Shown piece by piece: positions 16,030 to 36,581 of a DNA stretch of 64,000 bases (positions within the stretch are counted from its first letter, which is position 1; every line of letters begins with the position of its first letter). The position numbers were made by a program, and so were the translations under genes. This DNA comes from Mytilus californianus (lineage: Eukaryota), in contig NW_026262668.1 of NCBI RefSeq assembly GCF_021869535.1, forward strand, positions 18,104,001 through 18,168,000, read 5' to 3'. The notes below the pieces were generated by a model. That model had not been told where the DNA came from and did no database searches. It saw only the letters and a program-made list of their open reading frames with translations.

Positions 16030-16049
16030 ATGGCATCAACAAGCAGAGG
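16030..16049 (+). CDS. GTF2B: TFIIB exon 1 (MASTSRG)
   Basis: ATG at 16030, GTAAG donor at 16050, phase 2. Confidence 0.9.
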
Positions 16050-19000: not shown

Positions 19001-22000
19001 ATATAATGTGATTATAAAATGCCTAAACATTCAATATTGTGTTGATGAAAAAACCCAATACATTAAGGAGCTTGGTGGTGAAAAACCCAATTTGATATTT
19101 GCTTGAGGGGTGAATTGGAATTGATAATGCAATTTAAAAACTTTATCACCCAATTACATAAAAAAATGGTGAGTAAAAACCCCAATTTGTGAATTCTTAT
19201 CTGGAGCTCTGATTTATTGTATATTTTTCAGACCAAAGACAAAACAGATATGCTGTCCAGAACATCCTTATGCTAACTTAATAGAAGATTACCATGCTGG
19301 AGACATGATCTGTCCTGAATGTGGACTTGTGGTTGGAGATCGGTAAAGTTACTGATTGTTGTAATTATTATTTAGATCTGTCTGTTTTTCCTTCACACTT
19401 TTTCATTGGAATTTCCACAGCAACTACAAATAACAGGTTCTTAATGATTGAATAAATATTTGTGTTTAATGTTACTTTCATTACAGTCTTGTCTATAGTG
19501 TATCATGGTTTTTGTCGGTGCAAGAAGTCTAAGTACCATTGGAGAACCTTCAGTATTTGCAATCCTAGTCAATTAAGATTGGACAAATTTTGCCAATAGC
19601 AGGGTTGGAACTCTCAACCTACATGCATTTGTTGACTGGCTAAAGACAAATATACACATCAAACATTTGTAAATCAAATATTACTTCAAGAAGAGGAAAA
19701 TTATATTTACAAAATGTGAGATCAGTTCAATTTAATTCTGTTTTGTTGTGAGGTTCAGAAGTCGCAAAGACTTAATTGATATTAGTTAATTTAGTATAAC
19801 ATATTATAAATGTTTGTTGACAGTGTTGTAGATGTTGGGACAGAATGGAGAACTTTTAGTAATGAAAAAAGTACCGGTAACAAGGATCCATCTCGTGTTG
19901 GAGCTGCAGAGGTAAGATTCTAAAAAAATAAACAAACATAATAGAATATGATGTAGATTAAATAGCATTAGATATACATAAATTGATAATTGATAATAAA
20001 TTGTCAATGAGACAGTAACATAACAACACACAATAAACCCAACAGACATCTAATGGTCATCATACAGACTAAAAACACACAATAAACCCAACAGACATCT
20101 AATGGTCAATTCACAGACTAACAACACACAATAAACCCAACAGACATCTAATGGTCAACAAACCAACTAACAACACACAATAAACCCAACAGACATCTAA
20201 TGGTCAACACACAGACTAAAAACACACAATAAACCCAACAGACATCTAATGGTCATCATACAGACTAACAACGCACAATAAACCCAACAGACATCTAATG
20301 GTCATCATACAGACTAAAAACACACAATAAACCCAACAGACATCTAATGGTCATCATACAGACTAAAAACACACAATAAACCCAACAGACATATAATGGT
20401 CAACACACCAACTAACAACACACAATAAACCCAACAGACATCTAATGGTCATCATACAGACTAACAACACACAATAAACCCAACAGACATCTAATGGTCA
20501 ACACACCAACTAACAACACACAATAAACCCAACAGACATCTAATGGTCATCATACAGACTAACAACACACAATAAACCCAACGATCTAATGGTCATCATA
20601 CAGACTAACAACAACAGACATCTAATGGTCATCATACAGACCAAAATTGTCAATTGACCCCTTAAGGAGTTATTGCCCTTTAAGGACAATTTTACACAAT
20701 TTGTTTATCATGTTTTCTAACTTTAAAAATCTTCTCCTCTGAAACTACTGAACCAAATTAAACCAAACTTGAGTTTAATGATTCTTAGGTTATCTAGAAT
20801 AAAGTTTGTGTTATATTTTCTGTTTCCTCAGAAAACATGGCTGCCATGGCTAAAAATAGAACATAGGGTAAAATGCAGTTTTTGACTTATATCTCAAAAA
20901 CTAAAGCATTTAGAGCAAATCAGACAAGAAGTTAAAGTATTCATTAGGTCAAGGTCTATCTGGCCTGAAATTATCAGCCAAATCTGTATCTGATTTTCTG
21001 GTTATTGCCCCTGAATTGATGATTTTAAGGAAATTTTGCAGTTTTCGGTTACAATGTATTATCTTGAATATTATTATAGATAAAGATAAACTGTAAACAG
21101 CATAAAAGTTCAGCAAAGTAAAATCTACAAATAAGTTTCATGACCAAAATTGTAAATTGACCCCTTAAGGAGTTATTGTCCTTTATAGACAATTTTTCAC
21201 AATTTGTTCATCTAGTTTGCTTACTTTATAACATCTTCTCCTTTGAAACTGCTGATTTTTAATTCTTATGGTTTTAGTAAATCCAAAGGTATAAGGATTT
21301 GTTCTCATAATGTTAATAGGATTGAAAGTAAATATGAAGAAATTAAACATAACCTTATGTTTTCTGATAACCAACCTGATGTATTAGGATTGTGTGAAAC
21401 ATTTTTAACAAAACACACTACTGATAATGAATTACAAGTACCTGGTTATGTATTTGAAAGAAAGGACAGAACATCACAAGGCGGGGGTGGTCTGATTGTT
21501 TATTTTTCTGAAACAATTAAATTTTTAAGAAAAAACAACATCGAAATAGGGGGTATTGAAACAATGTGGGTTGAAATTAAACCAGATTACAAAAAATCCT
21601 TTTTATTATGTTTTGTGTATAGGCCACCAAAGTCACTGATAGATTGGGTTGATGATTTTGAAAAAGAAATAAGAGTGGCAATGACCATGAATTCAGATAT
21701 AACAATTATGGGTGATTTTAATTTTAATTTTAAAGCACCAAACAAACCTCCTCAAAAATGGCTGAATGTTTTAGAATCATACAATTTTCAACAACTGATT
21801 GTAGATGCCACAAGGGTAACAAAAGATTCTAGTACATTAATTGATCATATTTATGTCAATAATCCAAATATGGTACATGAATCACATGTGTGTAGATATG
21901 CAATTAGTGACCATTATCCTATCTGTTTAACAAGAAAAGAAGCAAATATAGGAAAAAAGAATACACACAGTACAATTACTTATAGAAATTTCAAAAATTT

Positions 22001-25000
22001 CAACCAAAATGAATTTTTATTAGATCTGCAAAATACACCTTTTCATAAAATTGAATTTGAAGAAAACCCCTCTGACTGTCTACAATTGTTTTATGATATG
22101 TTGAACAAAGCTTTAGATAAACATGCTCCTGTTGTTAAAAAGAGAGTTAAAAGGGACAGACAGCCTGAATGGTATAACAGTGAAATCATTTAGCTAGGAA
22201 TATGAGAGATAAATATAATGCACTTGGTTTATGGAGTGAGTATAGATTTTGGAGAAATAAAACTAAACATATCATAGATAGCTCAAAAAAGAATTATTAT
22301 AAAAATATGGTAAAAGACTCCAATGACCCTAAAACTTTATGGAAATGTCTTCACAGTCTGAACCCAAAAGTTAAAAATACACCATATGAGTTAGCCACAG
22401 AAGATAACAATACAACTAAAAGTAAAAAATCAATAGCAGAAACTTTTAATAACTTTTTCACTTCCTGTGCTGAAAAATTAAGAGAACAAGGAAGTTATAC
22501 ACCTGTAAACAAAGCAGATTTCAGTAATCTTGGTAAATTTGTTAAAAATAAATTACATAAACATGATAAATTTTCTATGGATAATATAGGACCAAAAATT
22601 CTAAGATTAAGCGCCCCTGTTATTGCATCACCTCTCACATACATATTTAACCGAATGATAGATACTGGTATATATCCTTCTTTACTGAAGAATGCTAAGG
22701 TAACACCAGTTTTCAAGGATGGTGACAAGCTTTTAGCAACAAATTACAGACCTATATCTGTTCTTCCAACTTTATCAAAATTAATAGAAAGGCATGTTTC
22801 TAATAACATGTACAAATACTTATCTAAACTTAAACTTTTACACCCTACACAATCTGGTTTCAGGCCGCAGCATTCTTGTCAAACTGCACTTATTAATATC
22901 ATTGACAAATGGTTGCAAGAAATGAATGATGGTAATTTAAACCTAGCAATTTTATTAGATTTTAAAAAAGCTTTTGATTTGGTAGATCATGACATTCTTT
23001 GCTTAAAGCTTGAAATTTATGGATTTAGTGAGGCTACTGTTAGTTTTTTCAAGTCATACCTGAATAACAGAAAACAGCAGGTAAACATTTGTAATGTTTA
23101 CTCTGAACAACAACATGTAAAATTTGGTGTACCCCAAGGTTCTATACTTGGTCCTCTATTGTTTGTGCTATTTATAAACGACCTTCCCTTATGCATTGAA
23201 AATTGTGAAACAGACCTATATGCTGATGACACCACTCTTCATAAATCAGGGAAAAACATAGAAAATATACATGATGATGTTCAAGAAGATTTATACAGGG
23301 TTGAAGAGTGGTGCAAAATGAATAACATGTTCATTGATGCAAACAAAACAAAATGTTTGGTTACTGGAACAAAGCAGAAACTATCAATTCAGACTTATCA
23401 ACCAAACTTGATAATAAATTCAAAAGTATTACAAAATTCTTCATGTGAAAAATTATTAGGTGTTAAAATTGACAGCACACTTAGCTGGAGAAATCAAATT
23501 GACCAAGTTTGTGCTAATATATCATCCAGAATATACCTTCTTTCTAAAATAAAGAAATTTTTAGATATAAATGCAAGGAAAACATATTACAATGGGTATA
23601 TTCTGCCCCTGATTGACTACTGCTGTATTATTTGGGGTGAATGTAAAAATGAAGGGATAACAAGAATTTTAAAACTCCAAAAAAGGGCAGCAAGATTAAT
23701 TCTAGATGCAGATCCTTTATCCCCCTCAGCCCCCTTATTTACAGAACTTGGGTGGATGACAGTTGACAATAGAATCAAATACCACAAATATTTACTTCTA
23801 TATAAATGTATGCGTATGGAAGCTCCAATGTACCTAGTTCAAAAGTTTAAACTGAAATCAGATAATAATCCTTAATCCTTGAGAGGTGTCACTCAAGGTA
23901 ATCTGATAGTTCCTAAGCCAAAAGCTGAGCTATTTAAGAAATCTTTTGTTTATTCTGGATCAGTGTTATGGAATGGACTACCACACAAAATGCGTAAAGC
24001 TCAAAACACTTATACTTTTAAACAAAGTATCAAGAAGTACTTAACACAGTCCTGATAAGATTATGTTTTCTACAATGTATTTGTATATTCTTTTATTTTT
24101 ATTTTTATTTGATTTTTTGACTACATGTGCATCTTGAACAGCTTTATATCTTATCATGTTAGTAATATTACATTGAACTAATTGACTGTAAATTAACTAT
24201 GTGTAAATATCTGTTTTTGATTGTATTGTAATTTGTATGTGAGGGCCTCAGGGAAGATTAGTTTATTGTAACTAACTGAGTTTACCCTCTTTAAGTAAAG
24301 AATTTATTATTATTATTACAATGTATTATTATATAATCAATTTCAGCCAAACTTGGGCTGATATGATTTTCAGAGTATCTAGTATAAATTTTGTATTTTA
24401 TTTTCTTGTACGTCAAGAAACATAGCCACTATGGCTAAAATGGAACATAAGGGTAAAATGCATTTTTTTGCTTTTGAAGAAAATATGACAGATACAAAAA
24501 ACATTTAAATGGCATTTTTAAGCCACTCATTATTTTTTTAAATTTTTTTATAAATGTTTTATTCCTAAATATTTCCTGTATACAATTACCTTAGTCGTCC
24601 AGGAACAGGCTAAGGGTCCCTGTTTACAAAATGAACCATCTATCCAGGGGTAATAGAAGGCAATAAAAATGTAGTCCACTTTTTACCTTGTATTTAAATT
24701 AGTGTCAAAAATATATCCATATAATGTTAGAAGCATCTAACAGTTCTATACCTTAATTTCAAAATAGTAAGTAAATAATAAGATACCCACACAAAAGATG
24801 TGCATTTACTACAATAAACATGATAGGCTAACACTTTTTTATCATTTCGATATTCTTATACAATAAACCATAAAAAAATGTACTTTGACTCAAGCTTATA
24901 CTGTCTAAATTTTCGTTATCACCGACTCCAATTTTGTCTTATCAATGATGTCAATGCCTTTCAATAGAAGAACAATTTTTAGATTATTTTTCAAGTTATG

Positions 25001-28000
25001 TTTCCAGATATTATAAATATCTTGAGGTGCTTTAGGTGTTTTGTTAAATTTTATTGAATTCCTAATTTTCCTAATTTTTCATACAGTCCATTTAGAATAT
25101 ATGATAATTATGTTTAGAAAATTATCATATTTTAGTATTCCCGTGTTTTTACCTAACAGAATGTCCTTTTCAACAAGAGGATTATTTATTTCTATGTTTG
25201 ATTTGATAAGTATTTCTTGGAGATTTTTTAAAATTAACTGTGATGTACTACAACTGAAAAATAAGTGTTGCAGGGTTTCTATATTGTTGTCATTTTGACA
25301 AATGTGAGTTAAGCCATTCATTAATATATATTGAAAAGCAAAAATAATAGTTGATGAAAGATTTAAGCAAAAAATTACAGGTGAGCGATTCAGGTTCTTG
25401 AGAAGTTGAGAGCCTCTTGCTCTGATAGATGGACTTTGTTTTTTACAGTTAACATTTACTTTTTTTGACATGATAAATTTGTAAACCTTCATGGATTGTT
25501 ATGAAACTTGGACAGAAGCTAATATTCAAGACCAAGAAATAGCATCTAAAGTAAAAGTTAATTTTTTTTTTAATTCTGTATTTCACTGATAAATGGACTC
25601 ACTTTTTTAAATCAACATTATACTTTTACTCTTACAACAGCAGTTGCAGGAGAGGTTCAGGGTTCATCAGAACACCTTACGAATTTTTTAACAGGAATTT
25701 TGTTTGCACATAATTTATTAACATATAATGGACTACCAAAAGTCAGTTCTAGCAATGTAGACTCGTCTTCAAATCCTCTCATAAATGAGGCAAAGCAGTG
25801 TACTATTGTGGCAATTGTGTGAAATGTTTTGAGTAAAAGGACCAGTTACTGTCACTTCAGAATCTAACTACTAAATAGAAGTTTTTCGCTTAATCTGAAC
25901 TATAGTCATATTTTGATATTCAATGGTAGGAAGATAAAGTTGGATGTCAAATAAACCTAACATATAGTTCTTGCATCCAAATTTCTGGAGCTTTTCTTCC
26001 TATTACTAAATCTGAACTGATTAAGAATTTATTTTACTTGAAATCAACAGCTTACATTGTATCCAATAAGAGCAAAGAAGTTAATTTTCAAATTATTAAA
26101 ACTTTTTTAAATTGTCAGGAAAGAAATTTTTGTTCTAAAGCATGCTTTGATATTACTTTGTCTGAAAACGATAAGTTTTTTAAAATCGAGGACGTCATGT
26201 TCCCGCATGCCTATCTTCCAACAACGTGTTAAAAAAAATGAAAACTCATAATTTTTTTGTTTTAATCAGATCAAATAAAACAAAGCCTCTAAAAATCAAA
26301 TGAAAGTTATAGTGTGCAGATGATAGCAGTATGCCGTATTAACAAAAAGTGTCCATTATTGCATAAAATGCCAGGTGACGGTAACTGGTTACTGACAGTA
26401 ATTGGTCCTAGGTCAGTAGGTCAGTACAGTATGTGGACAAAATTAATTTTTTTTTCGTATTTCTGTGTATTTTATATAAATCAATAAATTTCAAAAAATT
26501 ATGTTGAGCTCATTTCATCTCCAATTTTCATGACTTTTCACTTATAATCTCAGAAATATTTGCTTAATATGTAAAATTATTTTTGAAATTTTAATTATAA
26601 TTTTCAAGGATTCATGTTTTAATTTAATTGCAGACTTAAGTTTTGAAGTCAAAATATTACTACATTTGTATATACATTTGCTCATATTAACATAAAATCA
26701 TATGAACAAAAAAATTGTCTCAAAGGGGCATTAGCTACAAGATATAAAAAAAAAATATTATATTCTTTTGTTCAATCATTAATGAAAGTGAAATAGTCAA
26801 ATAATAATTTGCTTTTAGCAGCCGGTTTTGTTTGATTTTGCCAAAAAAAAGCTATGAAACATTGCTGATAATTCGACCTCATTGAATCCGTATTCATGTG
26901 ACCTCCAATTTAACCTCAGGCCCTCTTAGCTAGAGATGGGTTACGCATAAACTAGGCGTTTTCAGTGATTTAAAGGAATAGAATTTAACATTGAAAGGGG
27001 AACAAGGGTAAACTATTTGGTTGACTGATTCGATCCACAAAAACTTGCACATGTTCATTATCTATTTATATCTATATTTGTGTTTATATCGGGTTATATG
27101 ATCGTTGGCAGTCTTCGAAGGTCACATCGATGGTTAATTAGATGGTGTCTAGACTAAAATACAAATGAAATGCTGATACATATTATCAAGTCCATACATC
27201 GTAAATTGTTCATATACTATTTATAATTTGGATATACGTTTTAGAATGTTATCAATAAAATATGAGAGTTTGAGTCAAATCAGTGAACATGAATTTGACA
27301 GCTAATGCCCCTTTAATAATGCATACATAAAACAAAAAGCAATGTGGGATGAGAAATCACACTGATCAGTTTTGACAAAAACAAAGGAAATATGCAAATA
27401 TAAAAGAATGAATATAGTAACTTGTGATGTCAAAAAAATAATGCTCATGTTTAACTTATGAAATCTAAAAAACTAAGGTTTAAACAAAACTATGAAAATT
27501 TAATTGAGAAAAACTGCAAACATTTTTGAGTTTAATGATGAAAATTTCAGGAAAATGGTTATGAAAAGGGTTCAAAATTTACAAATTTGTATAGAATAAA
27601 AGATAGAATTGACTTTGTTCACGTATTGCAGTTCTCAAAATGTCCAGGATTCCATATTTTCAACAAAATGTGTTTGTTTGATTGAATATATTTTACATTG
27701 CACCACATTTTGTTTTTACAGAATCCATTATTAGATGGAGGAGACTTGAGTACAATGATAGCAACAGACCCGACCAGTATGTCGTATGACGAACATGGAA
27801 AACCAATGTATAAAAACAGACGAACGGTAAGTAATATATCTATTGAGTACAATGATAGCAACAGACCTGACCAGTATGTCGTATGACGAAAATGGAAAAC
27901 CAATGTATAAAAACTGACGAATGGTAAGTAATATATCTATTGAGTACAATGATAGCAACAGACCTGACCAGTATGTCGTATGACGAACATGGAAAACCAA

Positions 28001-31000
28001 TGTATAAAAACAGATGAATGGTAAGTAATATATCTATTGAGTACAGTGATAGCAACAGACCTGAACAGTATGTCGTATGACAAACAGGAAAAACCAATGT
28101 ATAAAAACAGACAAACGGTAAGTAATATATCTATTGAGTACAATGATAGCAACAGACCTGACCAGTATGTCGTACGACGAACATGGAAAACCAATGTATA
28201 AAAACAGACGAATGGTAAGTAATATATCTATTGAGTACAATGATAGCAACAGACTGGACTAGTATGTCGTATGACAAACACAGAAAACCAATGTATAAAA
28301 ACAGACGAACGGTAAGTAATATATTGAGTACAATGATAGCAACAGATCCGACCAGTATGTCGCATGATGAACATGGAAAACCAATGTATAAAAACAGAAA
28401 AACGGTAAGTAATATATCTATTGAGTACAATGATAGCAGCCGATCCGACCAGTATGTCGTATGACAAACATAGAAAACTAATGTATAAACACAGTAGAAT
28501 GGTAAGTAATATATCTATTGAGTACAATGATAGCAACAGATCCGACCAGTATGTGGTATGACGAACATAGAAAACTAATGTATAAACACAGTAGAAGGGT
28601 AAGTAATATATCTATTGAGTACAATGATTGCATCAGATCTTACCAGTATGTCGTATGACAAACACAGAAAACCAATGTATAAAAACAGACGAACGGTAAG
28701 TAATATATTGAGTACAATGATAGCAACAGATCCGACCAGTTTGTCGCATGATGAACATGGAAAACCAATGTATAAAAACAGAAAAACGGTAAGTAATATA
28801 TCTATTGAGTACAATGATAGCAGCCGATCCGACCAGTATGTCGTATGATGAACATAGAAAACTAATGTATAAACACAGTAGAATGGTAAGTAATATATCT
28901 ATTGAGTACAATGAAAGCAACAGATCCGACCAGTATGTGGTATGACGAACATAGAAAACTAATGTATAAACACAGTAGAAGGGTAAGTAATATATCTATT
29001 GAGTACAATGATTGCATCAGATCTTACCAGTATGTCGTATGACAAACACAGAAAACCAATGTATAAAAACAGACGAACGGTAAGTAATATATTGAGTACA
29101 ATGATAGCAACAGATCCGACCAGTTTGTCGCATGATGAACATGGAAAACCAATGTATAAAAACAGAAGAACGGTAAGTCATATATCTATTGCCCTTATGT
29201 CTGTTAATTTCATATTTAATTTTTGGTGAAAATGACATATTGCTGGACTCACCTGAAAGAAAACTCTGAACCCTGAGTATCAGCAATTTTGACTTGATGA
29301 TTTCTGTAGGTGCTGTGTTTTATTGTAAGTGAGATTATTTGTATTTTCTAGATGAGTAGTGCTGACAGAGCTTTGATAAATGCCTTCAGGGAAATAGGAA
29401 ACATGGGAGACAGACTTAATCTTCCTAAAATGATAGCAGTAAGTTTAAAAGGACATAAATCTTATTCTTTTAAGATTTTATGCGTATAGATTGAGGTTTG
29501 ATCAACATTACTTGTAAATTATCATCCTTCCTATAAGAAATTGTTTAAAAGTCAGGGTACAGCTATTGAGAAGTAGAATTTGAAATGATAACTTATAAAC
29601 AGTATGGAAATAAGAAATATGTAAATAATGGTAAACATGTTTCAGACTTTATGGTAACAAAATTAAAGTTTTCATGTAACATAAAATTATTAGAAGATAT
29701 GGCATGATTGCCAATGAGACAACTCTCCACCAGAGATCAAATGATGTGGTAAAGAAGTTAGCAACTATAGGTCACCATACAGCCTTCAACAATGAGCAAA
29801 AGCCATACCACACAGTAAGCTATAAAAGGCCCTGAAATGAAAAATGTAAAACAATTTAAATAATGAACAAAAACATAAGGCAATTTAAGCTTACTATCAA
29901 CCAGTTTTTGTCTCGCCTTGACGGAGTCAAAAAGCGAGACATAGGTATGCTGTTTCCGGCGTCGGCGTCAACAATGTATTAGTTTGTGATTAGGTCAAGT
30001 TTAAGGTGAACCACTAGTGGATGGTCAATGATATTTGTTATGCAGTTGTATTAGCACTGGCACATCTCATTTCCGTGGAGATTATTTGGCCCTGCCCCTC
30101 AGTCATGGTCTATTGACTTTGAAACTTTTGCTTAGTTTACATGTCTTAGTTTGTGATTAGGTCAGTTTATGGGGAACCACTAGTGGTAAGTCAATGATAT
30201 TTGGTATGCAGTTGTAAAAGCATTGACATATCTCATTTCCATGGAGATTATTTGGCTCCACCCCCTCAGTCATGGTCTATTGACTTTAAAACTTTTGCTT
30301 AGTTTACATGTATTAGTTTGTGATTAGGTCAGTTCAAGGGGAACCACAAGTGGTAAGTAAATGATATTTGGTATGCAGTTGTACAAGCATTGACATATCT
30401 CATTTCACTGGAGAATATTTGGTCCCACCCCCTCAGTCATGGTCTATTGACTTTGAAACTTTTGCTTATATTTCATGTATTAGTTTGTGATTAGGTCAGT
30501 TCAGGGGGAACCATTAGTGGTAGGCCAATGTTAATTGGTATGCAATTGTAAAGCATTAACACATCTCATTTCCATGGAGAATATTTGAACCCGCCCCCTC
30601 AGTCATGGTCTGTTGACTTTGAAACTTTTGCTTAGTTTACATGTATTAGTTTGTGATTAGATCAGTTTAAGATGAACCGCTAATGTCAATGATATCTGGT
30701 ATGCAAATTTATTGGCATTTGCAAGTCTCGTTTCCATGGAGATTATATAGCCCCACCCCCTCATCATGGTTCATTGACTTTGAAATTTTTACATAGTTTA
30801 CAAGTCAATGTTTGTGTTTAGGTTTGTTGAAAGGGATTGACTTATGATAAGTCTATGGTATTTGGTATGCAGTTGTATTAGCATTGGCACATCTCATTTC
30901 CATGGAGATTGTTTTGCCATGTACCTTCAGTCATGGTTCATTGACTTAGAATATTTGCATAACTTACATGTTAAAGTATTGCTTTTTTGATTTCAACATT

Positions 31001-34000
31001 TGCATTAACAAAAGTACAAAAAGGCGAGACATATCTCTGTGTTAACAGTTTATTGTTTGAAATAACAGGCGTGATGACTAGATCATTTTAAATATTAGTG
31101 AAAGATTCCCTAAAGGGTCTTTATCTCCCATAATCCTTAAAAGGATTTTAATTAATTTATGAATATCATATAGATGGGGGCAATTTTGAGATTAAGAAAA
31201 TATTCAAGTATTTTGCAGTTGATCATGTGGAAAAAACCTTAGAAACTCTTTTTAGAAAAAAAAGATATGGGAAGGGGTTTCCTATCCATATAGCTGGTAC
31301 ATTTATTCAATAAAGTTGCTGGAGCGATTTATAAACAAGACACCTTAAAGGTTGTTCTTTGTTAATACAGCTGTTTCTTAAACCACGCCTCTTTTGGGGA
31401 GATATATAATATTCATAGGTATTTCGTTTTGTTTACGTACTGGTTCCCAGATATGATCTCTATGTTTCATCTCATAGAGACATTACTTGGGAATGTTACC
31501 AGTATAAAAGCATATTGTTGCGGTGAAAATTGAATTCTGAAGTAGACACAAAGTGAAGGTAGGGGTAGTACAGAATTTTAGTATACATTTAAACTCTAAC
31601 AAGTTCGGGGCATAATAATGTTGAAAATATGCCGCACAGCCCTATGTCTTGACCTTTGAATAAAATAGTAGTGCATATCAACTTTTCATTCTAGGATATA
31701 ATTTTTTACGAAACTTCATAGTAAAAGTGGCAGAGTTTTAGCCGCAAAGGGAGTTCCTATGGGAAATTGCATTGTCCTTATTAACAGAAATGCAACCCTT
31801 TAAGGATTGTTATGGCTCAATTTTAGTTTCACTATGATAAAAAGGATGAATGAGGCAAAGTAATGAGTAAAACTCACATAGGCATGTTTGGTCAGGTAAG
31901 TTTTCACCATGTCATAGTGGTAGAAATTATTGTTTTCATCCAAATTTAACTGCACATAAAAAATTATTACTAATTTGATTTAAAGTATAATTAAATGTTT
32001 GTTTTGTAGGATAGAGCTAACAATTTATTTAAACAAGTAAATGATGGAAAAGCTCTGAAAGGCCGAAGTAATGATGCAATAGCAGCTGCTTGTATGTATA
32101 TAGCTTGTAGACAAGAAGGTGTTCCTAGGACATTCAAAGGTAAATATTGTGTATGTTCATTGCTTGTCAACGAGAAAGTGTTCTTTGGACATTCATAGTT
32201 AGATAGCCTGTATGTACATAGCTTGTCAACAAGAAAGTGTTCTTGGGACATTCATAGGTAATAGCAACAAAATATTTGTTCATAGCAAATTTTACAATCA
32301 TTCACTTACATGTAGTTGATAAGAATAATGATTTCTTCAACTATCTAATTTCAGATTACTGTAGAAACATTAATTTTCGTGGGGTTAAAATTTCGTGGTT
32401 TTGTCTCTATATAAAATTTCATGGGGATTTAATTTCGTGGTTTCCATTAAATGGAAGTGATATTTTATGAAGGTGAAATTTTCGTGGGGGTTTTAATTTC
32501 GTGGATATATTCTTTCCACGAAATAAAAAAAATTAAGTCCTCCACGAAAATTTCTGCTTTTACAGTATTTCTTTTTAAAAATTTAAACCACACCAAATAA
32601 TGTTAACTTTCAACCTAAAACAAGATAAATCATCATATAAGATTCTTTATTTAACACTTAGGTACTTTGCTCTTTGAAAAGCATTATCAATGCAGTGTTC
32701 AATATTTTTCCTTACACATGTTGGTGCATGAACTTGCTTCTTTTGCTTTAGGATACAATTATGCAACAGAATACTTTAAAGCTGTTGTGAATTGAATTTT
32801 TACTGAAATATATAACGGTTTTATTTTATTTACAATTTGCAGAAATATGTGCTGTGTCCAAAATATCTAAGAAAGAGATTGGTAGAGTGTTTAAACTGAT
32901 CCTGAAGAATCTAGAGACAAATGTAGAGCTGATTACTACAGGAGATTTTATGGTAAGATTTGATCAGATCTTAAATGGTTGCTTTTGTATGAAATAAGAA
33001 GGATTGTAGATGTCTCATGTTTACGGTTGTGCAGCATAACTTATATTCTTGTGACAAGTCACTGTGTTAGCCATGTTCAGCAATGTTCTTGTTTTTTTTT
33101 TGGCATTCACAGTACAAAGTGTAGTGTGGTGAATTCTTTTTTAGGTCATATTCATGCCAAGCAAAAACAGATGCTCAATTTACAAAATGATGTGTATGTG
33201 TATTACCATTTTATAAAAAAAAAACAGATGTGAATGGTGCATGAATCTACCTGTTCTGTTATGGACAAATATTAAAAAAATTGTCATGTTTGATTAATTT
33301 TAAATATTCTAATACAATGCAATGTTTAATTTTAAGTTCACAATGCACAATAAAATCAATTTTTATCCTGTTAGTGCTTGCACTTTGATTTCTTTTCATG
33401 AAGTATTTAAGTATATGAAATTCATTGTACCGGGTAAGTAACTGAACTAAGCATTTAATATTGTTTCTGATTCAGAAAAGATATATTGCTTATCAATGTT
33501 AAAAGCAAGCAATGTTTTATTTATTTCAGTCCCGATTCTGTTCCAATTTGGGTCTACCAACATCAGTACAGAAAGCAGCCACACATATAGCTAGGAAAGC
33601 TGTAGAAATGGATCTAGTCGCAGGGTAGGTAGAATTATTCAACATAAAATTACAAACTATAGCTAGGTATGCTTTTGAATTGGATCTAGTTGCAGGTTAA
33701 TCTTATTTTCATGCATTTTGTTTTAAGTATAGCGAGAAAATATTGTATTGACGGGTACAGGTCGTATGAATATCTAATAGGGTCACCTATAGTAACTAAT
33801 GGATGTACTTTCTAGTAATAAAGCATAGGGTAACTTTTTAGCTGTGCTGCAACAATTTAACACTCAATTTATATTTTGAATGTTTATAAGATACTATAAT
33901 TTATGATTAAATTTTGATTTGCCAATACACACATTTTTAGGTGTAGGTATGAGCACCTGACCCTGGAGACTGAATTGCGCACATGGCAACGATTGACACA

Positions 34001-36581
34001 GGTTTCTAGATCTTTTTGATCGATTATATCGTTTTTATCTCTAGTTGATCCTGGCCGGCAATGACCGTCTATGAAGGGGTGTATTTAGTCAAAGTTGGTT
34101 TGGTTTGTTGTATTTATGATTATTTATACATAGGAATTTTAATGATTTTGAATTATGTATGCATTGCAATGATAATATTTGTGAATATTTATATAAAACA
34201 ATCTGGGGTCCATTGAGCATGATGGGTTGTCAGCAAACTTAGATTATGTTTGCATTATTTATATTTGGCACGAGTATGTAGCTAAAACAATGTACATAGA
34301 ATTAGACAATATAGAAATAACCAGGACAGCTTTTAACCTTCCTTGTTTTACTGAGTAACACAGATCCTATTTAACTCTCAGTCAAATTATTGCATCGACA
34401 TATTGCCTTTTTAAATTAGTTTAAAATTATTATTTATGCATACAGAACAGATCAGATATTTAAGGTGTTACCACTACAAAATTATGACAATTATAGCTTT
34501 TTTTTTTACATTTTCCAGTGCAGAACAGACATCAAAATTGTTTTAAATGAGTTTTCATTTTACAAATTTTGAATACCAGAGTATGGGTCAGAAGCTAGGA
34601 ACATGTTTCAGATTATCTCCCCTCAATTAATATGTTATGTTGACATGCACTTAGATTGAATTATAATCTGTTCACAGAATACCTGCAATAATTTTTGCTT
34701 TAGGTGAACTGGAACACTGGCATATAGTTCTATGGAGAAATTAACATTCAATGGCAAGTTAATCACAATATCTGTTATTATATCATATTAAATGACTTTG
34801 GACTTAATGATACTCATAGCTGTTGGTATAATGATGATGTACATATTGCTGATTTTGTTTTGTAGGAGGAGTCCTATCTCTGTTGCTGCATCAGCTATTT
34901 ATATGGCTTCTCAGGCCTCAGCAGACAAAAAGAACCAAAAAGGTAACGAGAGTGATTGTTTTTTTAATTGCATCTAGTCATATTTGAAATAGGTATACTT
35001 TATATTGCACTTTTACCTAAATATTCAATTTTAATTATATCCTAATTGCAAAGGAAAATATATGGTAAGGCTACGTTTTTGCTCCTTGAACTTTAAAATC
35101 AAAAAGTATAAATCTACTAAATAACATCCTTCAGATGTTCATAAGACATTAGTCTGTCCAGATCTCAGTATTCGTATTTTTGAATTTTGTCTTACATATT
35201 TGCATTAGAACTTCAGCCTTCTTGCATTTATTGCAAAACTGAAATTACTGCCAAAATAGCCTCATTTTGGGCTCTTGTCATTATTATATAGATATAAACA
35301 AGAGCTTTACCTAAAGCCCATCAAGAGGAGACATATCTTGATTTGATAAGCAAAGTTATCTCCCATTTTATTTTGAAAGTTCTTTCTCCTTCCAAAGGAG
35401 GAAGTTTTGGTTAAATATTATACATTTATTTCCCTTGCCATTGGGAGATATGAAGATTTGTTCACCCAAGAAAATTCATATTTCACGAGTGCATTGCCAG
35501 AGGGAAATATGACTTTTCTAACCATTTGATTATACATTCTACTTAAAAAGAAACAGCTACCGGTAGAGGAATGCATGAAGAGATACGATCCTACATTGCC
35601 CTAAAATTAATGAATAAATAACACTATCTCTGAATTTGTAATTTTAGTAATGAAAAGGAAAAACATATTGGTTAACCTGTGTCTTGCAAGGAATTGAAAT
35701 CACTACATGAACAAAGTTTACAATAAATTCTACAGAAAGTTTCTGATATTACAATGAAGGTTGCAGTGTGAATAAGCTGAATTATCAAAATACTCATAGA
35801 AAATTTCTTAATTATGCCCCCACCGTAGCGAGGGGGCATTAAGTTTTACCCTTGTCCGTCTGTATGTACGTACATACATGTATGTACGTCCCAAAATTGG
35901 TTTCCATTCTCTAACTTAAGTTTGCCTCAACTAAATGTTATGAAACTTATAAACAATGCTTATTACTACAAAACTCAGATCAAGTACAAATTTGGGTAGC
36001 ATCACTTTTACAGTTCTTGAGTTATGTTCCTTTATAAAGTTATATGCAAGCGGGGGCATCATCTGTGTCCCATGGACACATTCCCCATTTATTGATCTAA
36101 ATGTTTTTATGCTAATCAATAAGACAACTATCCATAAAGTCTTATTGGCAAGTGTAGTACAACATTCTCATTTATTTATTTGATGTTGCAGGATAATTTA
36201 AATTAAATGTGGTCTCAGTCATGAAACCACCCCATGGTCATATCCTTATTTAACCTGGTCGTTCTAGTCAAGGATTTAAGGCGTATCTTAATCCAACTGG
36301 GAACTAGTTTATTCAAGCTCTGACACTTACATGCTTTAAATTGATTTTTATTTTTTTTTTCAATATGCTTCCATGAAGGTATTGTTGTTGACTTTCAAAA
36401 TTAGTGCCAGAATTAAAACAACAACTAATTGGTGATTTATATTACAGAGATTGGTGACATTGCTGGTGTAGCAGAGGTAACAATCAGACAGGCCTACAAA
36501 CAGATGTATCCCAGAGCACATGACTTATTCCCTGCCGACTATAAGTTCCACACACCAGTAGAACAGTTACCAACACAGTGA
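16030..36581 (+). CDS. GTF2B: Transcription initiation factor IIB, 10 coding exons, 318 aa
   Basis: join(16030..16049,19232..19342,19824..19911,27722..27826,29352..29438,32010..32139,32843..32952,33530..33624,34866..34942,36448..36581) = 957 nt, all introns GT-AG and phase-consistent. Translation MASTSR...CPEHP...[22 protein letters not shown]...[27 protein letters not shown]...GRSPISVAA...[15 protein letters not shown] matches the animal TFIIB Zn ribbon, B-reader and two cyclin folds. Confidence 0.97.
19232..19342 (+). CDS. GTF2B: TFIIB exon 2 (Zn ribbon)
   Basis: [37 protein letters not shown]; TTTTTCAG acceptor, GTAAAG donor. Confidence 0.95.
19824..19911 (+). CDS. GTF2B: TFIIB exon 3 (B-reader)
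   Basis: [29 protein letters not shown]; CAG acceptor, GTAAG donor. Confidence 0.95.
20020..20642. repeat. 49-bp minisatellite, about 12-13 copies, in TFIIB intron 3
   Basis: CAATAAACCC recurs at 20031, 20080, 20129 and onward. Confidence 0.9.
20643..24510 (+). repeat. ~500-bp-unit dispersed/tandem repeat (20643-21255 and 24336-24510) interrupted by a LINE
   Basis: Unit 2 breaks at GAAACTGCTGA (21255) and resumes at ATCAATTTCAGCC (24336); another copy lies at 40410-40975. Confidence 0.7.
21256..24335 (+). mobile_element. 5'-truncated CR1/L2-group LINE (APE endonuclease + RT), near-intact ORF2
   Basis: APE motifs (GLCETFL, YRPP, GDFN, LIDH, SDH) and RT motifs ([22 protein letters not shown]). 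One frameshift at ~22190 and one TAA at 23873-75, after which the frame continues to TGA at 24053-55. 3' UTR hairpin GAGGG-CTCAG...CTGAG-CCCTC and a (TTA)n tail. Confidence 0.93.
24780..25330 (-). pseudogene. L1/Tx1-type LINE C-terminal zinc-knuckle fragment
   Basis: Minus-strand translation contains [18 protein letters not shown]...ILLG, typical of L1/Tx1 ORF2 C-termini. Confidence 0.6.
26724..27312. mobile_element. TTAA-flanked MITE (Kolobok-like)
   Basis: TIRs AGGGGCATTAGCT / AGCTAATGCCCCT; flanks TCAA (left) and TTAA (right). Confidence 0.7.
27722..27826 (+). CDS. GTF2B: TFIIB exon 4 (B-reader/linker)
   Basis: [35 protein letters not shown]; TTTTTACAG acceptor, GTAAGT donor at 27827. 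Confidence 0.95.
27746..29191 (+). repeat. 15-copy tandem array (97/93-bp units) made of the TFIIB exon 4 3' end plus its 5' splice site
   Basis: Unit starts at 27746, 27843, 27940, 28037, 28134, 28231, 28324, 28421, 28518, 28615, 28708, 28805, 28902, 28999 and 29092. Confidence 0.97.
29352..29438 (+). CDS. GTF2B: TFIIB exon 5
   Basis: [29 protein letters not shown]; TTTTCTAG acceptor, GTAAGT donor. Confidence 0.95.
29905..31054 (+). mobile_element. Helentron-type non-autonomous element (family B) with about six 167-bp internal repeats
   Basis: 5' TTTTTGTCTCGCCTT with adjacent inverted AAGCGAGACA; 3' sub-TIR AAGGCGAGACA plus a short hairpin; unit marker at 29980, 30147, 30314, 30481 and 30647. 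Confidence 0.8.
32010..32139 (+). CDS. GTF2B: TFIIB exon 6
   Basis: [43 protein letters not shown]; phase 1 donor at 32140. Confidence 0.95.
32091..32265 (+). repeat. Three 59-bp copies of the exon 6 3' end and donor
   Basis: TGTATGT..ATxGCTTGT..ACxAGAAxGTGTTC...GGACATTCAxAG starts at 32091, 32150 and 32209. Confidence 0.85.
32359..32565. mobile_element. MITE, TA|CTGTA...TACAG|TA (Tc1/mariner-type target)
   Basis: Inverted termini, TA flanks, internal TTTCGTGG/CCACGAAA sub-repeats. Confidence 0.75.
32843..32952 (+). CDS. GTF2B: TFIIB exon 7
   Basis: [37 protein letters not shown]. Confidence 0.95.
33530..33624 (+). CDS. GTF2B: TFIIB exon 8
   Basis: [32 protein letters not shown]; phase 2. 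Confidence 0.95.
33586..33700 (+). repeat. Diverged duplicate (72-bp offset) of the exon 8 3' end
   Basis: TATAGCTAGGAAAGCTGTAGAAATGGATCTAGTCGCAGG (33586) versus TATAGCTAGGTATGCTTTTGAATTGGATCTAGTTGCAGG (33658). Confidence 0.8.
34866..34942 (+). CDS. GTF2B: TFIIB exon 9
   Basis: [25 protein letters not shown]. Confidence 0.95.
35812..36093 (+). mobile_element. Helentron-type non-autonomous element, family A (one core unit)
   Basis: TTATGCCCCC...GGGGGCATT 5' hairpin, GTCC/GTAC microsatellite, 3' GGGGGCATCA plus TGTGTCCCATGGACACA. Confidence 0.8.
36448..36581 (+). CDS. GTF2B: TFIIB exon 10 (last coding exon)
   Basis: [44 protein letters not shown]; TGA at 36579-81. Confidence 0.95.

What the first reader, a model, noticed from the sequence alone, without database searches (positions are those of the whole stretch)
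27746..29191. TFIIB exon 4 end plus splice donor amplified into a 15-copy satellite with 15 intact GTAAGT donors
Seen: each unit is the last 81 nt of coding exon 4 plus the first 12-16 nt of the intron. The boundaries share a TTG microhomology (exon GACTTGAGT, intron CTATTGCCC), which suggests slippage or unequal crossover. The exon-derived parts have diverged, yet all 15 copies keep G|GTAAGT. The last donor (29173) is only 179 nt from the exon 5 acceptor. Only donor 1 gives full-length TFIIB; any other donor includes TGA 27884-86 and predicts a 127-aa product (Zn ribbon + B-reader only) or an NMD target. Inference: an essential gene carrying a decoy 5' splice-site array whose copy number could tune TFIIB output, or one that relies wholly on exon definition to skip it.
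Basis: partly seen in the sequence, partly recalled or inferred. Interest (0 to 1): 0.86.

Follow-up and report, generated by a model that had tools for sequence, protein, structure and literature searches.

The report
Silent splice-donor minisatellite in mussel TFIIB
The end of one coding exon of the California mussel TFIIB gene, with its splice donor, is copied 15 times in tandem inside the next intron; this repeat type is already known from human genes and amphioxus, and the available RNA gives no sign that the extra donors are used.

Summary
Window 27746-29191 holds 15 tandem units of 97 bp (three of 93 bp). Each unit is the last 81 nt of TFIIB coding exon 4 plus 12-16 nt of intron, and each carries G|GTAAGT. 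The array is real: independent DNA contigs bridge unit joins, and Mytilus coruscus has the same unit in 6 copies.

The "tunable decoy array" reading is not supported:
- The 15 intact donors are not more than chance gives (0 of 41 substitution events; P 0.05 uniform, 0.18 after CpG correction). In M. coruscus 3 of 5 extra donors carry consensus changes.
- In stranded RNA reads, exons 4-8 sit at about 7-12x while units 3-15 sit at about 0.05x, the intron background.
- RefSeq models in four Mytilus species (318 aa) join donor 1 to exon 5.
- Copy number runs from 1 to 15 among Mytilus species.

This is a new member of a known kind: minisatellites whose first unit spans an exon-intron boundary. Examples are human F7 IVS7, LMNB2, PDGF, IFI6 and CBS, and the amphioxus "mirages". 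In most of these only the upstream donor is used.

Extra points: TFIIB exons 6 and 8 carry the same kind of array, varying from 1 to 27 copies across Mytilus. This scan had already noted such arrays elsewhere in this genome. I did not obtain direct junction reads, and use of donor 2 followed by NMD is not excluded.

The parts
27722..27826 (+). TFIIB coding exon 4 (35 codons, NPLL...KNRRT). Its last 81 nt are the exon part of unit 1.
   Evidence: Translation and acceptor/donor context. Exact match to residues 74-108 of the 318-aa M. californianus protein.
27827..27832 (+). Authentic 5' splice site GTAAGT (donor 1), phase 0.
   Evidence: The RefSeq protein joins KNRRT to MSSADR. A distant mollusc has an intron at the same position.
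27746..29191 (+). The minisatellite: 15 units of 97 bp (units 6, 10 and 14 are 93 bp). Fourteen extra G|GTAAGT pseudo-donors have their G at 27923, 28020, 28117, 28214, 28311, 28404, 28501, 28598, 28695, 28788, 28885, 28982, 29079 and 29172.
27746..28230 (+). Units 1-5, a monomeric part that is 91-98% alike.
   Evidence: Pairwise identity matrix and tree.
28231..29191 (+). Units 6-15, a higher-order repeat of 384 bp (93+97+97+97), 2.5 copies that are 95-99% alike. This is a sign of recent unequal exchange.
   Evidence: TRF period 384. Identities between the higher-order copies are 97.1%, 98.9% and 94.7%.
27884..27886 (+). In-frame TGA, reached if any donor other than donor 1 is used. It predicts a 127-aa product or an NMD target.
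29192..29351 (+). Unique rest of intron 4, ending in the acceptor ...ttttctag. Without the 14 extra units the intron would be 179 nt.
   Evidence: The homologous flank is seen in M. coruscus and M. trossulus.
29352..29438 (+). TFIIB coding exon 5 (MSSADR...KMIA).
32091..32265 (+). Same kind of array in the same gene: the last 49 nt of exon 6 plus 10 nt of intron, 59 bp x 3. The donor is lost in copy 2 and kept in copy 3.
33562..33700 (+). Same kind again: the exon 8 end plus donor with one degenerate second copy. This is the remnant of a 76-bp unit that has 12 copies in M. coruscus.

Best explanation
This is a selectively neutral, unstable intronic minisatellite of the exon-junction ("mirage") type.

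Origin (inferred): a 97-bp segment bounded by two TTG triplets was duplicated by slippage or another microhomology-mediated event. The segment is 81 nt of exon 4 plus 16 nt of intron 4. Unequal exchange then expanded it, most recently as a 384-bp four-unit block.

Why it is tolerated (inferred from precedents): the first unit is the real exon end, so every unit carries a copy of the strong donor. The spliceosome pairs the exon 4 acceptor with the first donor downstream, giving a 105-nt exon. This is the upstream-most-donor rule shown experimentally for the human F7 IVS7 minisatellite. The other 14 donors are removed with the intron and stay silent.

Shown here:
- the structure of the array;
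- its presence in independent DNA;
- its lineage-specific and variable copy number;
- the absence of array sequence from steady-state mRNA;
- the lack of excess donor conservation.

Inferred, not shown: the mutational origin, and the scanning or exon-definition mechanism of donor choice.
For: - Structure and higher-order repeat.
- Donor conservation is no more than chance: 41 parsimony events over 97 columns with 0 in G|GTAAGT, P=0.046 uniform and 0.18 once CpG columns are set aside. Other invariant runs of 9-10 nt exist.
- In M. coruscus, 3 of 17 events hit the donor core (-1 G>T, -1 G>A, +5 G>A).
- RNA: run X21, stranded raw reads. Sense depth is 4.11 in the bin holding exon 4 and 5.47 in the bin holding exon 5. 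It is 0, 0.36, 0, 0, 0, 0, 0 across 27890-29289. That is about 8x on exons against about 0.05x on units 3-15.
- Gene models: 318-aa RefSeq proteins of M. californianus, M. edulis/galloprovincialis and M. trossulus all read KNRRT-MSSADR. The window exons splice exactly to that protein.
- DNA: contigs of two runs bridge unit joins (X18 27985-28112, X20 28394-28526), at depths like the single-copy flanks.
- Relatives: M. coruscus has 6 copies with identical unit borders. M. trossulus and two M. galloprovincialis assemblies have 1 copy. A distant mollusc has a 128-nt intron here with no array.
- Same-type arrays at exons 6 and 8 vary from 1 to 27 copies, including 27 against 3 and 9 against 1 between two M. 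galloprovincialis assemblies.
- Precedents: PMC1557585 and PMC3087553.
Against: - No junction read was listed. My read laying stretch included very high-copy repeats (29690-31900) that filled the joints table, so the join 27826>29352 is inferred from depth and gene models, not seen directly.
- Exon depth was only about 8x. The bounds are therefore loose: under about 6% for use of the last donor, under about 28% for donors 3-4, and donor 2 is not resolvable.
- NMD would hide PTC-bearing isoforms at steady state.
- The intron part of the unit as a whole is somewhat less variable than expected: 1 event against 4.4 expected, P=0.047 after CpG correction.
- Two of the seven tandem arrays in the gene start inside an exon end. 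That is more than random placement gives (P=0.026), so junction arrays may not be purely random events.
Confidence: 0.85

Rival explanations
1. Functional decoy array. The extra donors capture a share of transcripts, send them to NMD or to a 127-aa Zn-ribbon/B-reader fragment, and copy number sets TFIIB output.
For: All 14 extra donors are as strong as the real one, and all lead to the TGA at 27884-86. In human IFI6 and CBS the two pseudo-sites nearest the real donor are used (PMC1557585). Donor 2 use cannot be resolved in my depth bins, and NMD would mask it.
Against: Units 3-15 have no RNA depth. No excess donor conservation in M. californianus, and donors are eroding in M. coruscus. Copy number is 1, 6 or 15 in close relatives, and the exon 6 array has 3 or 27 copies within one species; that is hard to square with a dosage dial on a basal transcription factor. 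No short N-terminal Mytilus TFIIB product turned up among public predicted proteins of 59-189 aa, though that is a weak negative.
Confidence: 0.08
2. Assembly artefact. The 15 copies are an expansion or mis-join made by the assembler, not the genome.
For: Short-read contigs of runs X18 and X20 leave holes over 28490-29089, so the exact count of 15 is not independently verified.
Against: The units are diverged (82-100% pairwise) with an ordered higher-order pattern, not identical stutter. Contigs from two runs bridge unit joins at single-copy depth. An independent assembly of M. coruscus carries the same 97-bp unit six times.
Confidence: 0.03
3. Junction-specific mutational hotspot, or a positive role for the arrays. 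Exon-donor junctions in mussels seed minisatellites more often than other DNA through a transcription- or splicing-coupled process, or reiterated U1 sites help expression.
For: Three of the eight donors examined (exons 2-9) carry such arrays, at the same junctions across Mytilus species. Within the gene, 2 of 7 TRF arrays start in an exon end (P=0.026). Unverified scan notes list many more in this genome.
Against: Acceptor-side arrays are also noted in this genome, so the effect is not donor-specific. Tandem repeats cover 19% of the gene. Readers notice exon-derived arrays more readily than anonymous ones. There is no mechanistic evidence.
Confidence: 0.1

Closest known systems
Human F7 intron 7 VNTR (37-bp minisatellite, 5-9 copies), PMC1557585
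   Same: The first unit spans the exon-intron boundary, so the authentic donor is followed by identical pseudo-donors. The array is polymorphic in length. Physiologically only the most upstream donor is used, and the paper explains this by 5'-to-3' oriented scanning.
   Different: The F7 unit holds only 4 nt of exon and 33 nt of intron, against 81 nt of exon and 16 nt of intron here. The F7 donor is weak (UGG/gugggu), while GTAAGT here is near-consensus. F7 splicing was tested with 50 constructs. Here the only evidence is depth and gene models.
Human LMNB2 (100-bp unit, 10-15 copies) and PDGF intron 4 (81-bp unit, 16-18 copies), as listed in PMC1557585
   Same: Very similar unit size and copy number. 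The first unit spans the exon-intron boundary. Only the authentic donor is reported to be used.
   Different: Vertebrate genes. I read only the summary of these cases in PMC1557585, not the original papers.
Human IFI6 (6-16) intron 2 and CBS intron 13 minisatellites, as listed in PMC1557585
   Same: Reiterated donors behind the authentic one.
   Different: [quoted passage not shown] Here I could not resolve donor 2, and use of donors 3-15 is not seen.
Amphioxus "mirages" (Adh3 and globin genes BflGb6/BflGb9), PMC3087553
   Same: Minisatellite-like tandem duplications of exon-intron boundaries in an invertebrate. Units are 10-160 bp. Regular splicing is not disturbed. Length differs between haplotypes, and there is concerted evolution within clusters.
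   Different: A different phylum. Here three such arrays sit in one gene and can be followed across five congeneric species.

Membership tests
Exon-junction minisatellite ("mirage" / F7-IVS7 type) | Head-to-tail tandem array of minisatellite unit size | tested here: met
   97 bp x 15, 89% matches.
Exon-junction minisatellite ("mirage" / F7-IVS7 type) | The first (or last) unit contains the authentic exon-intron boundary, so the unit is exon end plus intron start | tested here: met
   Unit 1 is 27746-27842, holding the exon 4 end at 27826 and the donor at 27827.
Exon-junction minisatellite ("mirage" / F7-IVS7 type) | [quoted passage not shown] | tested here: met
   15 GGTAAGT.
Exon-junction minisatellite ("mirage" / F7-IVS7 type) | Regular splicing uses the authentic site and the pseudo-sites are silent | tested here: inconclusive
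   RNA depth is about 8x on exons and about 0.05x on units 3-15. The 318-aa gene models use donor 1. No junction reads were listed, and donor 2 is not resolved.
Exon-junction minisatellite ("mirage" / F7-IVS7 type) | Length instability between alleles or close relatives | tested here: met
   15 copies (M. californianus), 6 (M. coruscus), 1 (M. trossulus, M. galloprovincialis). The sister arrays at exons 6 and 8 differ between two M. galloprovincialis assemblies, 27 against 3 and 9 against 1. Polymorphism of this array within M. californianus was not tested.
Exon-junction minisatellite ("mirage" / F7-IVS7 type) | Concerted evolution or turnover within the cluster | tested here: met
   A 384-bp higher-order repeat at 95-99% identity. 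Units cluster largely by species.
Regulated unproductive splicing (decoy or poison splice site coupled to NMD) | The unproductive isoform is detectable in RNA | tested here: not met
   No depth over units 3-15 in stranded RNA reads. Coverage was low and steady state only.
Regulated unproductive splicing (decoy or poison splice site coupled to NMD) | The decoy sites are conserved beyond the neutral rate | tested here: not met
   P=0.18 after CpG correction in M. californianus. In M. coruscus 3 of 17 events fall in the donor core. The array is absent in the M. edulis-complex species examined.
Regulated unproductive splicing (decoy or poison splice site coupled to NMD) | The isoform rises when NMD is blocked | not testable with these tools
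   Needs cycloheximide or UPF1 knock-down RNA-seq.

The most novel reading that the evidence does not exclude
Exon-donor junctions in Mytilus are true hotspots for minisatellite birth and long-term persistence. TFIIB keeps arrays at the same three donors across the genus, with copy number from 1 to 27. That would point to a transcription- or splicing-coupled duplication process, or to a mild benefit of reiterated U1 sites. On this reading the proximal pseudo-donor (donor 2) diverts a measurable share of TFIIB pre-mRNA into NMD, so that array alleles differ in output.
Probability: 0.08. Interest if true: 0.6.

Novelty: new member of a known kind. Interest (0 to 1): 0.27.

Why it matters
Taken alone this is an ordinary, probably neutral repeat of a described type, so it should not be counted as a regulatory discovery. 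Its modest value is as a natural test set for 5' splice-site choice. One conserved gene carries three junction minisatellites, with unit sizes of 97, 59 and 76 bp and near-consensus donors, at copy numbers from 1 to 27 across five congeneric mussels and between assemblies of one species. That allows a direct test, outside mammals, of the rule that the most upstream donor wins. It also allows a test of whether such arrays arise at splice junctions more often than chance. For annotation, the arrays are traps for gene predictors: older Mytilus models of this gene are 234, 249, 351 and 509 aa.

Tried and rejected
High-copy repeats at 29690-31900 and 32290-32690 flooded the tables of joints, loose ends and pieces, so no TFIIB junction was listed. 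Only the depth table and a few contig pieces were usable. A narrower stretch would have been the right choice.

2. A search of public predicted proteins with exon 4 plus its read-through (54 aa) found one protein, a distant mollusc's genomic ORF, and no array-derived or read-through products.

3. A search with residues 1-108 of the mussel TFIIB for short N-terminal products such as the predicted 127-aa protein found nothing closer than 70% identity. This is a weak negative, because only proteins of 59-189 aa are seen.

4. MAFFT alignments of single exons to a full-length TFIIB were badly misplaced. I used only three well-placed exons for the profile search.

5. Short contigs L001 and L002 from other bivalves show exon 6 without the 59-bp repeat, but they are too short and too diverged to say more.

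6. A paper search for such arrays in Mytilus or bivalves found none. An abalone hit was an ordinary intronic minisatellite.

7. Rejected: the idea that exon 4 took its sequence from a dispersed satellite. The exon sequence is conserved in species without the array, so the direction is exon to array.
Full report
**What is there.** Tandem Repeats Finder reports window 27746-29191 as a 97-bp repeat, 15.0 copies, 89% matches. It also reports a 384-bp period, 3.8 copies, 94% matches. A script finds exactly 15 GGTAAGT between 27826 and 29172, spaced 97 nt, or 93 nt after units 6, 10 and 14. Each unit is the last 81 nt of a coding exon plus the first 16 nt of the intron; the three short units have 12 nt. 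The triplet TTG stands at the left edge (27746-48, inside the exon) and just after the last unit (29189-91). Units 1-5 are monomers 91-98% alike. Units 6-15 form a four-unit higher-order repeat whose copies are 95-99% alike.

**The gene.** The + strand carries TFIIB.
- Exon 1 ATG is at 16030.
- The later exons are 19232-19342, 19824-19911, 27722-27826, 29352-29438, 32010-32139, 32843-32952, 33530-33624, 34866-34942 and 36448-36581.
- Spliced together, they translate exactly to residues 8-318 of the 318-aa protein that NCBI names transcription initiation factor IIB-like of Mytilus californianus.
- The window is identical over 16000-37500 to the locus fetched from assembly GCA_021869535.1.

**Are 15 intact donors more than chance?** No.
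- On a neighbour-joining tree of the units, parsimony counts 41 substitution events over 97 columns, 18 of them in 14 CpG columns.
- None falls in the seven columns of G|GTAAGT. That gives P=0.046 if all columns are equal and P=0.18 for GTAAGT once CpG columns are set aside.
- Three other invariant runs of 9-10 nt exist in the unit.
- The 16-nt intron part as a whole is slightly quiet: 1 event against 4.4 expected, P=0.047.
- In the sister array of M. coruscus, 3 of at least 17 events hit the donor core (-1 G>T, -1 G>A, +5 G>A). Pooled, that is 3 of 58 events against 4.2 expected.
- In the exon 6 arrays several extra donors have lost GT.

**RNA.** One run of stranded raw RNA reads (X21, about 6% of the run read) gives sense-strand depth as follows.

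| Bin | Content | Depth |
|---|---|---|
| 27690-27889 | exon 4 | 4.11 |
| 27890-29289 (seven bins) | units 3-15 | 0, 0.36, 0, 0, 0, 0, 0 |
| 29290-29489 | exon 5 | 5.47 |

- Scaled to exon length, exons 4-8 sit at about 7-12x. Units 3-15 sit at about 0.05x, which is the level of other unique intron bins.
- From Poisson counts, steady-state use of the last donor is below about 6%, and use of donors 3-4 is below about 28%.
- Donor 2 lies in the same bin as exon 4 and cannot be judged.
- The joints table listed no TFIIB junction.
- The donor 1 to exon 5 join therefore rests on the depth profile, on the 318-aa gene models of four Mytilus species, and on a 318-aa Logan-derived protein that reads KNRRT-ISSADR.
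- NMD could hide unproductive isoforms.

**Is the array real DNA?** Yes. Contigs from two other runs bridge unit joins: X18 at 27985-28112, and X20, labelled as another organism, at 28394-28526. Their depths (29 and 23) match the single-copy flanks. The diverged, ordered units are not what an assembler stutter looks like. An independent assembly of M. coruscus has the same unit six times. The exact count of 15 is not independently verified.

**Relatives.** I reached the orthologues by an exon search of protein representatives, a profile search and cluster look-up, and then fetched the gene loci. blastn of the window exons against these loci gave the copy numbers below.

| Species (assembly) | Exon 4 end | Exon 6 end (59-bp unit) | Exon 8 end (about 76-bp unit) |
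|---|---|---|---|
| M. californianus | 15 | 3 | 2 |
| M. coruscus | 6 | 6 | 12 |
| M. trossulus | 1 (207-nt intron) | 2 | 1 |
| M. galloprovincialis GCA_900618805.1 | 1 | 27 | 9 |
| M. galloprovincialis GCA_965363235.1 | 1 | 3 | 1 by blastn; 1-2 decayed copies seen by eye |
| M. edulis (partial loci) | not covered | at least 2 | about 7 |

- The M. coruscus exon 4 unit has identical borders to the M. californianus unit.
- A more distant mollusc has a 128-nt intron at the same position and no array.
- The exon 4 array is therefore specific to the M. californianus and M. coruscus lineages.
- By general knowledge these two species group outside the M. edulis complex; I did not test that here. Alternatively, the array collapsed to one copy in the other species.
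- All three arrays are highly unstable in length.

**What it is.** This is a known kind.
- In F7, LMNB2 and PDGF only the authentic upstream donor is used. In IFI6 and CBS the two nearest pseudo-sites are also used.
- For F7 the authors show with 50 constructs that the pseudo-sites are functional but lose to the most upstream site. They interpret this as 5'-to-3' scanning, with some contribution from exon definition.
- PMC3087553 describes the same structures in amphioxus as "mirages". There they leave regular splicing undisturbed, differ in length between haplotypes and evolve in concert.
- Earlier notes of this scan list further donor-side and acceptor-side junction arrays in this same genome. 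Follow-up agents reached the same class for three of them. I checked the literature myself but not those other loci.

**Mechanism.**
- Inferred origin: a microhomology-mediated duplication between two TTGs 97 nt apart. The unduplicated M. trossulus intron also has TTG about 12 nt after its donor. Unequal exchange followed, and the higher-order repeat is its recent trace.
- Inferred tolerance: the exon 4 acceptor, with a strong pyrimidine tract, pairs with the first donor 105 nt downstream. The later donors would make exons of 202 to 1451 nt and are removed with the intron.
- A purine-rich stretch just upstream of the unit (27735-27745) belongs only to the real exon and may help define it. This is conjecture.

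**Is junction anchoring more than chance?** Within the gene (19232-36581), TRF finds seven arrays covering 19% of the sequence, and exons make up 5.4%. Two arrays start inside an exon end and run across the donor. Random placement gives two or more in 2.6% of trials. A third such array, at exon 8, is below the TRF threshold. This is suggestive only. A genome-wide census is needed.

**Verdict.** The interpretation as a tunable decoy array is not supported. The feature is a new, well-documented member of the junction-minisatellite class, most likely neutral. Use of donor 2 with NMD remains untested.

Noticed in passing
window 32091-32265 and 33562-33700; loci L006 10535-12060 and 13502-14200; L010 6002-6360 and 7834-8750: TFIIB exons 6 and 8 carry the same kind of exon-end-plus-donor array. 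Copy number runs from 1 to 27 across five Mytilus species. It differs sharply between two M. galloprovincialis assemblies: 27 against 3 for exon 6, and 9 against 1 for exon 8.
   Followed up: partly
window 29690-31100 (167-bp tandem array at 29974-30951) and 31290-31890: These are extremely abundant repeat families, with summed contig word depth of 10^5 to 10^6 in DNA runs. The 167-bp array is also transcribed mainly from one strand: depth up to 322 on one read orientation against 2-13 on the other in run X21.
   Followed up: no
window 32290-32690: An intronic repeat with RNA depth 70-140 on the read orientation opposite to TFIIB exons. It ends sharply at 32569, where 134 reads share a loose end with 0.97 agreement. 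It looks like an antisense-transcribed repeat or a transposon end.
   Followed up: no
window 21243-24055: Two long + strand ORFs (316 and 557 aa, then 58 aa) with the look of a non-LTR retrotransposon (endonuclease plus reverse transcriptase) sit inside TFIIB intron 3. I did not run them against a family library.
   Followed up: no
window 20021-20613: A 49-bp x 12 tandem array begins about 110 nt downstream of the exon 3 donor. It contains no exon sequence.
   Followed up: no
protein cluster (P0269, P0273): A 178-aa cysteine-rich protein, named a WAP-domain protein by one source, is fused to TFIIB in an older 509-aa M. edulis model. It is probably the downstream neighbour gene. Older Mytilus TFIIB models of 234, 249, 351 and 509 aa look like mis-annotations around these arrays.
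   Followed up: no
L006 8795-9500 (M. galloprovincialis intron 4): Intron 4 is about 880 nt in both M. galloprovincialis assemblies because of an insertion of about 700 nt unrelated to the exon 4 unit. The authentic donor there reads ACT|GTAAGT.
   Followed up: no
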